Shown: positions 51,406 through 56,354, counted from the whole stretch's first letter. The stretch is 63,899 bases of DNA, filler included, from Octopus bimaculoides (GCF_001194135.2; 6 parts of 5 records of this genome joined end to end with filler, not necessarily neighbours in it), one strand, 5' to 3'. The notes: generated by a model not told the origin, from the sequence alone. A program made the numbers and translations.

Positions 51406-51528
51406 TCAAAATAAACATCTGATAAGTCATAAGATTTTTCTTCATCATCATAAGTTTCTTCTGATTCTGAAGATGCTATACTACCTTCAGAAGAAGTTTG
51501 GTAAACTTCCATCCATGAATTGTAGTAT
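51406..51528 (-). CDS. EIF2AK4: GCN2-like eIF2-alpha kinase exon: subdomain IV and start of the acidic insert, (R)YYNSWMEVYQTSSEGSIASSESEETYDDEEKSYDLSDVYF(E/D)
   Basis: ctactgttttag| acceptor, |gtaagt donor, 123 nt, phase 2-2, open; RYYxxWxE followed by an acidic insert is the eIF2-alpha kinase signature. Confidence 0.9.
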
Positions 51529-52449
51529 CTAAAACAGTAGAGAATAGTTCTTTCTAATTGAAACACATACAATGAGTATTAGGGAAAGTATGGTAATAAA
51601 GTAAACAAGTTAACATATATAATTAGTCATATTTATGTGATATGGTGTGTGTATATGAAACTAAGATTCACAATGGAGAATTGCTGTCACCTCCTGGCAT
51701 GTTTCTGCTACACACAGGTATCCATGATTGCATCCAGAAAAGAGTCACCTGTCTAACTAGCTCCAGTCTCTGGCCTACAGGCAAGCTGTCTTTTCTCTCT
51801 GTGTTTTCTATTCCAACAGTGGTCTCTGCTCTTTGGACCTGGTTGGGCCTATTTCAGGTTCATCCAGGCATTTCCTCTACTCAACACTCATATCCAACCC
51901 CATCCAAATCCCACATTAATCAATACTCCCAGTTTTTCTTTCAGAAAATGTCAACCTGCTGGAATTATCCCCTGTTAGTATTATTACTGTGGAGGCACAT
52001 GGCATAGTGATTAGGGTGCTGGACTCATTATTGTAAGGTTGTGGTTTCAATTCCTGGACCAAGCAATGCGTTGTGTTCTTGAGCAAAACATTGTTCCAGT
52101 CCAATCAGCAGGTAAAAATGAATAATCCCGCAATGGGTTGGTGTCCTGTCCAAAGAGGAATATATACGCCAGAAAAACCAGGACACTGACCTTATTCTCT
52201 TTACTGTTAAGGTTTCGAGAGAAACATTAATGGTACCAATCTCACCAATCTAAGAGGGTCTATAAATACTTTCTTCAGATCAGTAAATACAAAGAAAAAA
52301 CAAGACAAAGGAGAGGATGAAAGAAAGAGAGATAATATGACAGAAAGCAAAAAAAAAAAAGACAAAAGAAACAAAATGCAAACAAAAACTGTTTTTATTT
52401 TTTACTTCATCCAAGAAAAAAGTATCATGCACTTGTCTCCAGAGATCTT

Positions 52450-52802
52450 CAGGTAAGGTTGGAAGAAGAGCCCCTTCAGTCATGAATGACCATGGGATTG
52501 CACCTTACAAAGTTCCCCTTTCAAGGCACAAGTCCAGGCAAGGTTGTTTATGGAAGACCAGCAGTCACCCATGCATACCAGTCTCCCCTCTCCATGCTAC
52601 TGATGTTATCCAAGGGAAAGGCAAAGGCTGATACAGCTTGGCACCAGTGATGTCGCAACTCATTTCTGCAAATGAGTGAACTAGATCAGCATGAAATAAA
52701 ATGTTTTGCTGAAGAACACAACACACAGCCCAGTCCGAGAATTGAACTCATTCCTCATGACTGTGAGCCCGATGCTCAAACCATTGAGCCATGCACCTTC
52801 AC
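52450..52802 (-). mobile_element. tRNA-headed SINE (family D); + strand copy at 59305-59560
   Basis: Head gtgaaggtgc.tggctca.tggtt.gagcat...gagttcaattc; shared body ccttgccttt.ccttggataa.atcagt..., accagcagt/actgctggtcttccataaacaa. Confidence 0.7.
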
Positions 52803-53137
52803 CAGGTAAGGTTGATGTAAATAATATTTATCTTCTATAAATTAATGATTTTCAGAGAGTAATTTAGCTAGGAAATATTCCAGAAGAATACAGTTTTTGA
52901 GGAGGAAGGACTGAGTGTGTGTTTTGGCAAAATACTTTGGGAAAGTTAATTTAAAACTGGCTACTTAAGGGGTTTGGTTGTCCTCTAATGAAATAATTGC
53001 AGTAAAAGAGATGGGAATATTAACTTTGTGTCAATTATCTTTAGAGTTAATTTAAGCAAACATTATATTGGAAAAGGAAAATAAATAAGATTGAAACATT
53101 TGAATTGTCAGACTGTTATGAAATGAAAATATACTAC

Positions 53138-53262
53138 CTAACAATATTTTCATGATTCAGTCGAGACAATAGCTTTACTTCTGTTGTGATGTTTTTAAAA
53201 TGCTTGACATTTGAGTGTATAATCTTTATAGCATAATGTCTTGTATCCATTTTGTTCTTCAC
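53138..53262 (-). CDS. EIF2AK4: GCN2-like kinase exon: subdomains II-IV, VKNKMDTRHYAIKIIHSNVKHFKNITTEVKLLSRLNHENIV(R)
   Basis: ctctttttttttttatag| acceptor, |gtagta donor, 125 nt, phase 0-2; catalytic Lys (YAIK) and alpha-C Glu (EVKLLSRL.HEN) as in GCN2. Confidence 0.92.
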
Positions 53263-53767
53263 CTATAAAAAAAAAAGAGATTATTAAATAATTTGAGAAC
53301 GTGTAGTTATTTTAATTTAAGAGAGAAAAGTTGTAATCGCTAGGGCCTGTTTTGATGTGAATTTATCAGGGCAAAAACAAACAGCCTGTATGAGCCTTTT
53401 TTTTTCTATGAAAAGTTCATTAGTCTAAAGAAGCACAGTACCCACAGTCTTGTTCAGATATTCCTTGACAGAGAAGTCATAAAAATGAGGTTACAACAGT
53501 TTGTCTTCAACTTAGTGTATTGGAAGTTTGTAGGAGAATGGAAAAATGGGTATGAAATGGTTTTTAATATAAGTTTTGCAGTAAACAATGTTTAAAATAG
53601 CATACTGATGAATTAGACACAGCATAGCAGCATTGAGAAAAGAGAGAAGGTAGCAAGAAAAAGTGGATTTTCTTCATGATGGTAAACAGTCAGCAAGTTC
53701 AATGAGTAGAGACCACAGAATGATCAATATTTTTTTTTTAATGAATGTAAAATGAATGTAAAAAAAT

Positions 53768-53803
<36 letters not shown>

Positions 53804-53843
53804 CCATGATGCCTCTTAAAATTATTAAAAATAATATTCTTAC

Positions 53844-53971
53844 TTTTATAACATTTCCAAAACCACCTTGTCCTAAGAATTCAATTACTTCAAATTCATT
53901 TTGAAATCTCTGTGTGTTTAAAGCCCATCGATACTGTTTTCTTAATTCTATCTTCTCTTCATCTTGGCTAT
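53844..53971 (-). CDS. EIF2AK4: GCN2-like kinase exon: linker and glycine-rich loop, (D)SQDEEKIELRKQYRWALNTQRFQNEFEVIEFLGQGGFGNVIK
   Basis: tttttttttaacattcag| acceptor, |gtaaga donor, 128 nt, phase 1-0; RFxxEFExxxxLGxGxFGxVIK motif. Confidence 0.92.
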
Positions 53972-54189
53972 CTGAATGTTAAAAAAAAAATGACACCAAT
54001 GATAAAGCATATACTATAAACAATGTTTAAACGTTACCCTTCAGACACACAGATGGGGGATATCCATAGATCTAGTTATCTTTAATAATGCAAGATACTC
54101 TGAATATCAAGTAATTTGTCAAATAAGTGATGACTGTTCAAAGGATGGTATATAATACTAAAGCCACAGCTGTGGTTGAGATAAGTGCA

Positions 54190-54580
54190 GTCATGGGGCT
54201 ATGTGGTAAGAAGTTTGCTTCCCAACTACATGATTCAGGGTTCAATCACACTGTGTGATACCTTGGGTAAGTGTCATCTACTATAGCCTCAGGTTGACCA
54301 AAGCCTTGTGAGTGAATTTGGTAGGCAGAAACTGAAAGAAGCCCATTGTGTGTGTATAGGGGGAGTATCTTTGTGCTTGTACCCATACCACCACTTGACA
54401 ACTGGTGTTGCTTTGCTTACATTCCAGTAACTTAGCAATTTGGCAAAAAGGGAAAACAGGGATTGATAGAATAAATACCAGGTTTATAAAACAAGTACTG
54501 GGGTCAATTTGTTTGAGACTAAACCCTTCAGGGCAGTGCCCCGGCATAGCCACAGTTCAAACACTGAGACAAGTAAAAAA
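54190..54580 (+). mobile_element. SINE family A copy (CpG-decayed)
   Basis: Head gctatgtggtaagaagtttgcttccc...ccttgggtaagtgtc, and family tail. Confidence 0.8.
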
Positions 54581-54651
54581 TAAAAGATCTCCAAGAAAAA
54601 AAAAAGGTAAATGCAAATACCAGCTACCAAATTAAATGAGACTGTGCTATA

Positions 54652-54906
54652 CTCTTTTTACTCATTTACTTGTTTCAGTCATTTGACTACGGCCATGTTG
54701 GAGGACCACCTTTAGTCGAGGAAAACGACCCCAGAACTTATTCCTTATAAGCCTAGTACTTATTCTATTGGTCGCTTTCGCCGAACCGCTAAGATACGGG
54801 GACATAAACACATCAGGATCAGTTGTCAAGCGATGTTGGCAGCGGAGGGAGACAAACATAGACACACACATACACACACACACATATATATATNNNNNNN
54901 NNNNNN

Positions 54907-54938
<32 letters not shown>

Positions 54939-55117
54939 TATATAGATATATACAACAGGTTTCTTTCAGTTTCCATCTACCAAATCCACTCACAAGGCTT
55001 TAGTTGGCCCGAGGCTATAGAAGAAGACACTTGCCCAAGGTGCCACGCAGTGGGATTGAACCCGGAACCATGTGGTTGGTAGGCAAGCTACTTACCACAC
55101 AGCCACTCCTGCGCCTA
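54652..55117 (-). mobile_element. SINE family A copy (younger), tail-to-tail with 54190-54580
   Basis: Near-consensus reverse complement ending at cacagccactcctgcgcct. Confidence 0.85.
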
Positions 55118-56328
55118 TGTTTATATATTTCTAGACAAAATTGGTGTCAGGTAAAATGAAATGATTACAACTAGTATTCATAGTACATTGCAAATTTGGA
55201 ATGCTGGAAGCTTACTCCAACTCTGAGATTCATATCAAATACTCAAGATATCCTGTGGAGACCCGTTGGATGTATGCAAACATACATCTGTGTCAGAGAC
55301 GTAGTACTCAATATATAAGTATACATTTCTTCATATACTTCTGTCCCTTCTTATACTTAAACGTAGATCCAATTATTTCCCAGAATTATAACCTGCATTT
55401 TAAACATACACGCATCCATATGTACACAGAGACTGATATGCACCATGCACAAGTACACGCCGACACACATTCACAAACACAACATTTGTGCCTGTCTACC
55501 TGTGTTTATGTATGTGCATATGTACATGTTATGTGTCAGAAGTTTGAATCAGCACAAATTTAGGCTTCCCTCCAGGTAAAGGACTGCAGACACTCACACA
55601 CACGTACGTATACACACACACTAACAAGCACACACACACATCAAAAAATGATTATTTTGAATCCATATCAATCTGCACAGTCTGCAGGAGACTGCAGGTC
55701 ATATTTTCCAACTGCCATAAGTACAAATACCCAAGACAACCAGAGGGATGAAGGAAGAGAGAGAGCCAACATGGTAAATCTCCTTCAAAGAAGATCTGAA
55801 GCAATTTAGCATCACCTGGGAAGAAGATGCAAGGGATGACTGAAGAAGTCTTGCTACCTGATGTTATAGGCCAATTTTACAAGAGGAAGTAAGACTAAGA
55901 CCCAGTCTTGTGCAGTTTTGTACAATTTCTCAAATCATCCAACCAAAAATAAGGCTTCAATAAAGGACAAACCAGCAGGTGACTCATAGTTAGGAGTGTT
56001 CCACATGCACAGAAAGGGGTTTTCATATCATGTCCCCTAAATCCAATACATTTAGCACAGGGCCAGCAATTTGGGGGAGGAGATAAGACAATGACATCAA
56101 CCTCAGTACTCAACTGGTACTTTTATTGATCCCAAAAGGATGAAAGGCAAAGTCGGCCTTGGCAGCATTTGAACTTAGAAGATAAAGACAGATGAAGTGC
56201 CACTAAGCATTTTACCTGGCACACTAACGATTGTGCCAACTCACCACCTTTATTTTAATGGTTTGATATTAAAATCTGTCAAAGTAAAATAATAAATTAG
56301 AGAGGTAAAAAAAAAAACAGATTCTTAC

Positions 56329-56354
56329 CTGAGTCTTCAAGGAAATGATATTTA
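56329..56354 (-). CDS. EIF2AK4: 26-nt micro-exon of the GCN2-like gene, (x)KYHFLEDS(D)
   Basis: ttcttctttttttttgcag|TAAATATCATTTCCTTGAAGACTCAG|gtaaga; the phase-1 end joins the 53971 exon in frame (G+AT = Asp). Confidence 0.7.

What the first reader, a model, noticed from the sequence alone, without database searches (positions are those of the whole stretch)
51406..56354. Divergent GCN2-type eIF2-alpha kinase: intact catalytic N-lobe but no visible in-frame start
Four exons splice to KYHFLEDSDSQDEEKIELRKQYRWALNTQRFQNEFEVIEFLGQGGFGNVIKVKNKMDTRHYAIKIIHSNVKHFKNITTEVKLLSRLNHENIVRYYNSWMEVYQTSSEGSIASSESEETYDDEEKSYDLSDVYF. The G-loop, the catalytic Lys and the alpha-C Glu are all present. It looks more diverged than I expect of a GCN2 orthologue (short linker; KIIHSNVKHFKNITTE instead of KRI.LNP..KQ..+I.RE), suggesting a paralogue. 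The first in-frame Met in the visible open frame lies after the G-loop. The product is therefore either started from an unseen exon (e.g. in the 56389-56573 gap), an N-truncated decoy, or not made.
Basis: partly seen in the sequence, partly recalled or inferred. Interest (0 to 1): 0.7.

Follow-up and report, generated by a model that had tools for sequence, protein, structure and literature searches.

The report
Octopus GCN2 gene without pseudokinase domain
This is the middle part of the annotated octopus gene for GCN2, the kinase that slows protein synthesis when amino acids run short. Its start codon lies upstream of the sequenced piece, so the gene itself is ordinary, but octopus and cuttlefish GCN2 lack the pseudokinase domain that yeast and human GCN2 need.

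Summary
They are exons 3 to 6 of six coding exons in this piece. The six splice through canonical AG/GT sites into 184 aa, 100% identical to residues 168-351 of RefSeq XP_052829452.1, 'eIF-2-alpha kinase GCN2 [Octopus bimaculoides]'.

The piece is identical to GCA_001194135.2 chromosome CM046616.1. The missing start is a window-edge effect: exon 1 (Met, RWD domain) lies about 15.8 kb beyond the piece's upstream edge. Both N gaps are intronic. Gap-free O. vulgaris and O. sinensis loci show only about 155 nt of AT-rich intron where the 185-N gap sits.

The decoy, pseudogene and 'not made' readings are rejected. dN/dS is 0.04 (kinase domain) to 0.16, and the reading frame is intact in four octopod species and in cuttlefish.

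Coleoid GCN2 is about 1200 aa, evolves fast, and has no pseudokinase domain. A profile search finds all pseudokinase exons in a clam locus and none in four cephalopod loci. Six independent cuttlefish RNA-seq assemblies carry the same pseudokinase-less ORF. No canonical cephalopod GCN2 turned up, but copy number was not tested genome-wide.

The parts
59877..59942 (-). Coding exon A (66 nt, phase 0 to 0): NKILEDKVRKRKNYIRKQINEV, residues 168-189, in the charged linker after the RWD domain.
   Evidence: tblastn 100% identity to P0084 and P0042; acceptor ttttttaag|AAT and donor GTT|gtaagt
58511..58596 (-). Coding exon B (86 nt, ends in phase 2): PEPLTRTESLEIDSSIQSGEIKIKEDIK(N), residues 190-218.
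   Evidence: tblastn 100% to P0084. The trailing AA plus the T of the microexon gives Asn218, exactly as in the RefSeq protein.
56389..56573 (.). 185-N assembly gap inside intron B-C (2156 nt). Holds no exon.
   Evidence: In gap-free L002 and L003 the homologous interval is about 155 nt of AT-rich sequence that ends in the microexon's acceptor. Intron B-C is 1954 nt in O. vulgaris.
56329..56354 (-). Coding exon C, a 26-nt microexon: (N)KYHFLEDS(D), residues 218-227.
   Evidence: Acceptor ttttttgcag|T and donor CAG|gtaaga. 26/26 nt identical, with the same splice sites, in O. vulgaris and O. sinensis.
54894..54906 (.). 13-N assembly gap inside intron C-D, within a (TA)n/(TG)n microsatellite of a repeat insertion.
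   Evidence: Flanks read; TRF. The region 56328-54510 has no colinear counterpart in L002/L003 and instead hits many dispersed repeat copies.
53844..53971 (-). Coding exon D (128 nt): (D)SQDEEKIELRKQYRWALNTQRFQNEFEVIEFLGQGGFGNVIK. Pre-kinase linker, beta1, and the G-loop GQGGFG at 53873-53856.
53138..53262 (-). Coding exon E (125 nt): VKNKMDTRHYAIKIIHSNVKHFKNITTEVKLLSRLNHENIV(R). Beta3 catalytic Lys (AIK, 53232-53224), a shortened beta3-alphaC loop, and the alpha-C Glu (53187-53167).
   Evidence: This exon was the query that retrieved the Octopus and Sepia GCN2 proteins.
51406..51528 (-). Coding exon F (123 nt, ends in phase 2): (R)YYNSWMEVYQTSSEGSIASSESEETYDDEEKSYDLSDVYF(E). Beta4 and the start of the acidic beta4-beta5 insert typical of GCN2.
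   Evidence: donor GA|gtaagt. The next exon (residues 353-383) lies beyond the piece and an N gap, at L001 39323-39397.

Best explanation
The piece is an internal 11.3-kb stretch of the Octopus bimaculoides GCN2 (EIF2AK4) gene, transcribed from the minus strand. Its six exons encode residues 168-351: the charged linker after the RWD domain, a short unique linker that includes a 26-nt microexon, the kinase N-lobe (G-loop, catalytic Lys, alpha-C Glu, beta4) and the start of the acidic kinase insert.

The start codon and RWD domain are in four exons upstream of the piece. The C-lobe lies in exons downstream of the piece, and the HisRS-like and C-terminal regions are seen only in the sister-species loci.

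Shown: the gene is intact, spliced in frame and under purifying selection. In coleoid cephalopods it lacks the pseudokinase domain and evolves fast.

Inferred from the family, not tested: the product senses uncharged tRNA or stalled ribosomes through its RWD and HisRS-like parts and phosphorylates eIF2-alpha Ser51. It must reach the active state without the pseudokinase-kinase contact used in yeast and human.
For: Identity and locus:
- The piece is 100% identical to GCA_001194135.2 CM046616.1 (L001 25793-37128, reversed), between the same N gaps.
- The six exons, all AG...GT, splice to 184 aa identical to XP_052829452.1 residues 168-351. NCBI names that protein and its O. sinensis and O. vulgaris counterparts GCN2.
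- Exon 1 with the ATG is at L001 10001, 15.8 kb upstream of the piece.

Family assignment:
- Octopus full-length versus PDB: GCN2 8t7t E=8e-169; GCN2 kinase-domain constructs about 259 bits, versus PERK 151, HRI 141 and PKR 132 bits.
- Pfam finds RWD, one Pkinase and tRNA-synt_His.

Selection:
- O. bimaculoides versus O. sinensis dN/dS is 0.16 (residues 1-640), 0.10 (window exons) and 0.04 (kinase domain), with dS about 0.08-0.11, similar to the roughly 9-10% intron divergence.

Pseudokinase absence:
- The mammalian alignment skips residues 205-585.
- A pseudokinase HMM built without bivalves or cephalopods finds 8 colinear exons in the clam locus (iE 6e-19 to 3.5e-3). In O. bimaculoides, O. 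vulgaris, O. sinensis and Sepia loci with 10-kb flanks it gives only cross-hits on the true kinase exons.
- On proteins it scores 369-448 bits in 14 canonical metazoan GCN2s and nothing beyond the kinase cross-hit in Octopus, Argonauta and Sepia.

Expression:
- A 1204-aa pseudokinase-less ORF sits on 3.7-4.2 kb contigs in six RNA-seq runs (SRR29271470-85). One contig maps in 18 or more spliced blocks onto the Sepia pharaonis locus.
Against: - No transcript evidence was obtained for O. bimaculoides itself. Its RefSeq model stops at 686 aa, because the 3' exons are not found after a 100-N gap in that assembly.
- In neighbour-joining trees the cephalopod clade sits outside the other molluscs, as sister to all other animals (81% bootstrap). 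That could mean an old paralogue rather than a long-branch artefact.
- Whole cephalopod genomes could not be scanned for a second locus.
- Kinase activity and eIF2-alpha specificity are inferred, not tested.
Confidence: 0.93

Rival explanations
1. It is a divergent paralogue of GCN2, and a canonical, roughly 1650-aa, pseudokinase-bearing GCN2 exists elsewhere in cephalopod genomes.
For: The kinase domain is 47-53% identical to bivalve and beetle GCN2, against 58-61% among those. Over 753 conserved columns Octopus is 38-42% identical to other animals, against 50-61% among them. NJ trees place cephalopods outside Mollusca.
Against: - The protein keeps the GCN2-specific RWD, insert-bearing kinase and HisRS-like domains.
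- With Octopus GCN2 as the query, the 120 best of 2236 hits include canonical GCN2s of more than 100 animals. The only cephalopod entries are the roughly 1200-aa form from Octopus, Argonauta and a Sepia mRNA, plus the partial 995-aa Sepia pharaonis genome model of the same gene.
- The exon-E search of 1.84 billion representatives found only the Octopus and Sepia clusters among cephalopods.
- Identity is slightly higher to molluscs and brachiopod than to the cnidarian, as expected of a fast-evolving lophotrochozoan orthologue.
- The basal position is what long-branch attraction produces with a distance method.
Confidence: 0.12
2. It is a pseudogene, or an N-terminally truncated decoy that starts inside the kinase domain, or it is not expressed.
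For: There is no ATG before the G-loop anywhere in the 184 aa encoded in the piece. The O. bimaculoides RefSeq model is truncated at 686 aa.
Against: - Upstream exons with the ATG and an RWD domain are present in the same locus.
- dN/dS is 0.04-0.16.
- All six splice-site pairs are intact, and the microexon is 26/26 identical in two other species.
- Full 1201-1207 aa ORFs exist in O. sinensis, O. vulgaris and Argonauta, and a 1204-aa ORF in cuttlefish mRNA.
- The truncation coincides with assembly gaps.
Confidence: 0.02
3. A missing coding exon, or the whole pseudokinase domain, is hidden in the assembly gaps of this piece.
For: Gap lengths (185 and 13 N) are estimates. The same gaps persist in the chromosome-level record.
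Against: - Gap-free O. vulgaris and O. sinensis loci show about 155 nt of AT-rich intron at the first gap. The repeat insertion that carries the second gap has no counterpart in them.
- The exon B/C and C/D junctions are in phase and reproduce the annotated protein.
- The pseudokinase profile finds nothing in the gap-free loci.
Confidence: 0.02

Closest known systems
Canonical metazoan GCN2/EIF2AK4 (mammalian structure 8t7t; bivalve, gastropod and brachiopod proteins of 1650-1700 aa)
   Same: RWD domain, charged linker, eIF2-alpha-kinase-type catalytic domain with an acidic beta4-beta5 insert, HisRS-like domain and a similar C-terminal end. The alignment covers Octopus 13-202, 247-324 and 333-1046. 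The motifs LSRLNHENIVRYYNSW, YIQMEYCEK, HRDLKP and DFGLAT are kept.
   Different: - No pseudokinase domain: 44 residues stand where mammals have about 380.
- The kinase insert is about 60 aa instead of about 130-150 (PMC12867742 gives human 661-788).
- The beta3-alphaC loop is 3 residues shorter, with AIKII, ITTEV and HRDLKPGN substitutions shared by Octopus and Sepia.
- Total length is about 1200 aa.
- The substitution rate is roughly doubled.
Yeast Gcn2 (PDB 9f58, 1zyc)
   Same: Kinase and HisRS-like regions align (E=7e-107). It is the functional paradigm: uncharged tRNA and GCN1 lead to eIF2-alpha Ser51 phosphorylation (established knowledge).
   Different: In yeast the pseudokinase domain is required for activation (PMC4014428 abstract; PMC12867742). 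The cephalopod protein has none.
Oomycete GCN2 (Phytophthora ramorum, 1514 aa)
   Same: RWD followed directly by the kinase domain. The pseudokinase profile gives only the kinase cross-hit, as in cephalopods. This shows that a GCN2 without a pseudokinase domain exists in nature.
   Different: Probably the primitive state: PMC12867742 speaks of GCN2 orthologues from before the pseudokinase domain emerged. The cephalopod state is a secondary loss inside Metazoa, where the 14 other animals tested here have the domain.
PERK, HRI and PKR (the other eIF2-alpha kinases)
   Same: Same kinase subfamily. They are the next best PDB matches.
   Different: Clearly lower scores (132-151 bits versus about 259 bits for kinase-domain-only constructs). 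They have no RWD or HisRS-like domains.

Membership tests
GCN2 / EIF2AK4 | eIF2-alpha-kinase-type catalytic domain that scores best against GCN2 | tested here: met
   Window peptide: GCN2 E=2e-19 versus HRI 1e-14, PERK 4e-14 and PKR 3e-12. Full-length orthologue: GCN2 kinase-domain constructs about 259 bits versus 151 bits or less.
GCN2 / EIF2AK4 | Catalytic N-lobe residues: G-loop, beta3 Lys, alpha-C Glu | tested here: met
   GQGGFG, AIK and TTEVKLL lie in window exons D and E. HRDLKPGN and DFG are in downstream exons of the same gene.
GCN2 / EIF2AK4 | Large acidic insert between beta4 and beta5 | tested here: met
   Present but short, about 60 aa. It begins in window exon F.
GCN2 / EIF2AK4 | N-terminal RWD (GCN1-binding) domain | tested here: met
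   PF05773 E=1e-20 at residues 13-123 of the O. bimaculoides protein. Its exons are in L001, upstream of the piece.
GCN2 / EIF2AK4 | HisRS-like domain C-terminal to the kinase | tested here: met
   PF13393 E=6.5e-10 at residues 648-946, and human HisRS structures at E=3e-21, for O. sinensis. Not recoverable in the O. bimaculoides assembly.
GCN2 / EIF2AK4 | Pseudokinase domain between RWD and kinase. Typical of fungal and animal GCN2, but not universal: absent in Phytophthora. | tested here: not met
   Absent from proteins and from four genomic loci, with a clam positive control. Because orthologues without it exist outside animals, I treat this as a variant architecture and not as an exclusion.
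GCN2 / EIF2AK4 | C-terminal dimerisation and ribosome-binding domain | tested here: inconclusive
   Only a non-significant alignment of Octopus 1105-1201 to mammalian 1550-1649. Pfam HGTP_anticodon2 is weak in the Sepia mRNA product and not found in Octopus.
GCN2 / EIF2AK4 | Phosphorylates eIF2-alpha Ser51 on amino-acid starvation | not testable with these tools
   Needs biochemistry or genetics.
GCN2 / EIF2AK4 | Single-copy orthology (no second GCN2 locus in the genome) | tested here: inconclusive
   No canonical cephalopod GCN2 in protein searches, but genomes were not scanned. The NJ tree does not place cephalopods within Mollusca.

The most novel reading that the evidence does not exclude
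Coleoid cephalopods (octopuses, argonauts, cuttlefish) carry as their only GCN2 a fast-evolving, roughly 1200-aa form. It secondarily lost the whole pseudokinase domain and half of the kinase insert, yet it is expressed and under purifying selection. That would make it a natural metazoan GCN2 that works without the domain held to be essential for activation in yeast and human cells.
Probability: 0.65. Interest if true: 0.55.

Novelty: new variant of a known kind. Interest (0 to 1): 0.38.

Why it matters
As flagged, the finding is ordinary. It is a window-edge view of an annotated gene, and the decoy and pseudogene ideas can be dropped.

What may be worth keeping is the architecture. The pseudokinase domain is reported as required for GCN2 activation in yeast (PMC4014428), and its dimer as critical in human cells (PMC12867742). 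The 14 other animal GCN2s tested here all have it.

A lineage whose expressed, constrained GCN2 has none offers a natural experiment on how the kinase is switched on. It would be a compact GCN2 for structural work. It also raises the question of why integrated-stress-response sensing changed in coleoids. In ten searches of the held literature I found no paper that describes this.

Tried and rejected
1. It missed the identical Octopus protein, so it was useless for identification. The same tool with a bivalve GCN2 returned 77 GCN2s but no cephalopod. Since it also missed the known Octopus and Sepia proteins, I draw no conclusion on copy number from it. Only the search with Octopus GCN2 as the query had working positive controls.

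Exon E alone was used instead.

3. Plain tblastn with bivalve pseudokinase domains was negative but only moderately sensitive: 5 of 6 beetle tiles and 1 of 6 tiles of another animal were detectable. I replaced it with a profile HMM and a clam-locus control.

4. Control loci for Patella (gene too long), Mizuhopecten and Lingula (not on record) could not be fetched. Mercenaria worked.

5. NJ phylogeny did not settle orthologue versus old paralogue, because of the long cephalopod branch. No ML software was available.

6. Literature searches for GCN2 with cephalopod, octopus or mollusc found nothing on cephalopod GCN2.

7. Considered and rejected:
- A hidden exon in the 185-N gap.
- A reading frame crossing the 13-N gap.
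- Candidate ORFs in introns as coding exons. They are repeat, SINE or LINE debris.

8. No structure prediction was run. It would not bear on any of the open points.

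
Full report
**Layout and gaps.** The usable piece is window 50252-61587 (11,336 nt, 35% G+C). It has two N runs, at 54894-54906 and 56389-56573. The gene therefore runs from high to low coordinates, and 'upstream' means 56574-61587.

I tested the 13-N gap first. It is 1423 nt below the donor and 923 nt above the acceptor. No reading frame crosses it. Continuity of the protein there comes from splicing, not from the letters either side of the gap.

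**Observation.** Reading the exon borders and splicing them gives these exons:
- C: 56354-56329, a 26-nt microexon.
- D: 53971-53844.
- E: 53262-53138.
- F: 51528-51406.

Each has a polypyrimidine-AG acceptor and a GT donor, and the phases match.

The product matches Pfam Pkinase (E=2e-13). Its best solved relatives are GCN2 kinase domains (E=2e-19), followed by HRI, PERK and PKR. The G-loop, AIK lysine and alpha-C glutamate are present, and the first Met (M274) does follow the G-loop.

**Identification.** A search of 1.84 billion representative proteins with exon E alone found a 1201-aa protein matching across all 42 residues (reported as 98% identity; the printed sequences are the same) and a 995-aa protein at 83%. 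Their records name them 'eIF-2-alpha kinase GCN2-like [Octopus vulgaris]' and 'EIF2AK4 [Sepia pharaonis]'. The Octopus cluster also holds XP_036367432.1 (O. sinensis, 1201 aa) and XP_052829452.1 (O. bimaculoides, 686 aa).

- A: 59942-59877.
- B: 58596-58511.

I had already picked these out as candidates from the six-frame read. The six exons splice to 184 aa, identical to residues 168-351 of the O. bimaculoides RefSeq protein. The piece is 100% identical to GCA_001194135.2 chromosome CM046616.1 and is bounded there by the same N runs.

**Where the start is.** In that record the ATG exon (MSSGINDV..., start of the RWD domain) lies at locus position 10001. That is 15.8 kb beyond the upstream edge of the piece. 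Three more RWD/linker exons follow before exon A. The next downstream exon (residues 353-383) also lies outside the piece, past another N run. 'No visible in-frame start' is therefore an effect of seeing 11 kb of a gene that spans about 87-91 kb in the complete O. sinensis and O. vulgaris loci.

**The 185-N gap.** The gap-free loci of O. vulgaris (L002) and O. sinensis (L003) are colinear with the piece at about 90% identity. The microexon is 26/26 identical in both, with the same splice sites. The interval that corresponds to the gap is about 155 nt of AT-rich intron.

Intron B-C is 2156 nt here and 1954 nt in O. vulgaris. Intron C-D is 2357 nt here against about 593 nt there. The difference is dispersed-repeat insertions, one of which carries the 13-N gap. 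No exon is hidden in either gap.

**Pseudogene or decoy.** Nei-Gojobori dN/dS between O. bimaculoides and O. sinensis is:
- 0.16 over residues 1-640.
- 0.10 over the window's exons.
- 0.04 over the kinase domain.

dS is about 0.08-0.11, in line with the roughly 9-10% intron divergence. Values against O. vulgaris are the same.

Complete ORFs of 1201-1207 aa exist in O. sinensis, O. vulgaris and Argonauta hians. A 1204-aa orthologue is carried on 3.7-4.2 kb contigs assembled independently from six RNA-seq runs (SRR29271470-85). One such contig maps in at least 18 spliced blocks, at 96-98% identity, onto the Sepia pharaonis genomic locus. So the gene is transcribed and spliced in a cuttlefish. 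The decoy, 'not made' and pseudogene readings are rejected.

**The divergence is real.** The alignment confirms it. Octopus has AIKIIHSNVKH---FKNITTEV where bivalves, a beetle and others have AIKRI.LNPK....KKITREV. Sepia shares AIKII, KNITTEV and HRDLKPGN.

- Kinase-domain identity of Octopus to bivalve and beetle GCN2 is 47-53%, against 58-61% among those.
- Over 753 gap-free columns Octopus is 38-42% identical to other animals, while those are 50-61% identical to each other.
- Octopus and Sepia are only 49% identical to each other.

**Missing pseudokinase domain.** The larger difference is in domain architecture. Pfam finds RWD, a single kinase domain (two stretches, split by the insert) and a HisRS-like domain in Octopus. 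Bivalve GCN2 has a third kinase-like stretch, the pseudokinase domain. The alignment to the 1650-aa mammalian structure 8t7t pairs Octopus 13-202 with 22-205 and Octopus 247-324 with 585-664. Mammalian residues 205-585 have no partner.

The window shows this directly. Exon A still aligns to the post-RWD charged linker. Only exons B and C (37 residues) separate it from exon D, which carries the G-loop.

To exclude unannotated exons I built a pseudokinase profile from ten animals, with no bivalve and no cephalopod, and searched six-frame translations:
- Clam Mercenaria locus: eight colinear exons covering the whole profile (iE 6e-19 to 3.5e-3).
- O. bimaculoides, O. vulgaris, O. sinensis and S. 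pharaonis loci with 10-kb flanks: only the weak cross-hits on the true kinase exons that the clam also shows (iE 1e-4 to 5e-3).

On proteins the profile scores 369-448 bits in 14 canonical animal GCN2s and 63 bits in a fungus. In Octopus, Argonauta, both Sepia sequences and Phytophthora it gives only the kinase cross-hit. The loss therefore predates the octopus-cuttlefish split. Bivalves, gastropods and a brachiopod keep the canonical 1650-1700 aa form.

**Orthologue or paralogue.** With Octopus GCN2 as the query, 2236 proteins pass E<=1e-20. The best 120 include canonical GCN2s of more than 100 animals. The only cephalopod entries are the roughly 1200-aa form from Octopus, Argonauta and the Sepia mRNA, and the partial 995-aa Sepia pharaonis genome model of the same gene. 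The exon-E search likewise found no other cephalopod cluster.

This argues for a single, fast-evolving orthologue, but it rests on annotated proteomes and not on genome scans. NJ trees put the cephalopod clade (100% bootstrap) inside Metazoa (100%) but as sister to all other animals (81%), on a branch about twice the usual length. I read this as long-branch attraction. An old paralogue is not excluded, and I give it about 12%.

**Mechanism.**
- Shown: the window's exons encode the ATP-binding half of an intact eIF2-alpha-kinase-type domain. The same gene encodes HRDLKPGN, DFG and the activation-loop Thr. In the sister species it also encodes a HisRS-like domain.
- Inferred from the family: the RWD domain docks on GCN1, the HisRS-like region senses uncharged tRNA or the stalled ribosome, and the kinase phosphorylates eIF2-alpha Ser51.
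- Because the pseudokinase domain is needed for activation in yeast (PMC4014428) and its dimer is critical in human cells (PMC12867742), the coleoid enzyme must be released from autoinhibition some other way. That is open.

**Verdict.** As flagged, the finding is an ordinary internal fragment of an annotated gene. The by-product, a pseudokinase-less, rapidly evolving GCN2 in coleoid cephalopods, is visible in public records but was not found described in the library I could search. It is a modestly interesting new variant of a known kinase.

Noticed in passing
window 61145-61587 (+), cut by the piece's edge: An ORF antisense to GCN2, in the intron upstream of exon A, encodes a reverse-transcriptase fragment (Pfam RVT_1, E=6e-11). 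It is probably a LINE copy running into the adjacent assembly gap.
   Followed up: partly
window 54197-54588, 54943-55126, 57194-57624, 57966-58109, 50401-50477, 52014-52090, 59329-59546, 60709-60771: Several direct and inverted copies of one or two dispersed repeat families, 70-90% alike, often followed by (TG)n or (TA)n tracts. Each also hits many places in the O. vulgaris and O. sinensis loci. They are SINE-like and account for the larger introns in O. bimaculoides.
   Followed up: partly
window 56763-56834 (-): Borderline Rfam tRNA match (30.1 bits against a gathering score of 29) that ARAGORN does not call. It lies next to an 82-nt inverted repeat (56701-56782 / 57013-57094) and a 61-nt direct repeat. 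Probably a tRNA-derived repeat head, not a gene.
   Followed up: no
window 50252-50385: A 20-nt minisatellite (CACACGTTCATATGAAAGCA, 6.7 copies, 99% matches) directly at the piece's edge, next to an assembly gap. It may be why the assembly breaks there.
   Followed up: no
window 58912-59193 (-): A 93-aa ORF ending ...RPSCSPRTRWLDNI..., which from memory looks like the C-terminal tail of a LINE ORF2. No Pfam hit.
   Followed up: partly
L001 (O. bimaculoides CM046616.1) 60771-86175: The RefSeq model XP_052829452.1 ends at 686 aa with junk-like residues. Exons for residues 644-1201 (HisRS-like region and C-terminus) are not found downstream of a 100-N gap at L001 61931-62030, and a Siva-domain gene follows at 81828. 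In O. sinensis and O. vulgaris the next exon is less than 2 kb away. Likely a scaffolding or assembly error rather than a truncated gene.
   Followed up: partly
L002 77294-77446 and 78797-78922; L003 73770-73922 and 75283-75408: The exon for residues 890-940 (HisRS-like region) has a second copy, 93% identical at the protein level, about 1.5 kb downstream in both O. vulgaris and O. sinensis. This is a tandem exon duplication that could be a mutually exclusive exon pair.
   Followed up: no
P0083 (XP_036367433.1, O. sinensis isoform X2): An annotated 1091-aa isoform starts at Met111 and lacks most of the RWD domain. If real, it would be a GCN1-blind form of the kinase.
   Followed up: no
alignment: Octopus and Sepia GCN2 are only 49% identical over conserved columns. 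That is less than bivalve versus vertebrate (about 51%), so the acceleration continued after the coleoid split even though dN/dS between close Octopus species is low.
   Followed up: partly
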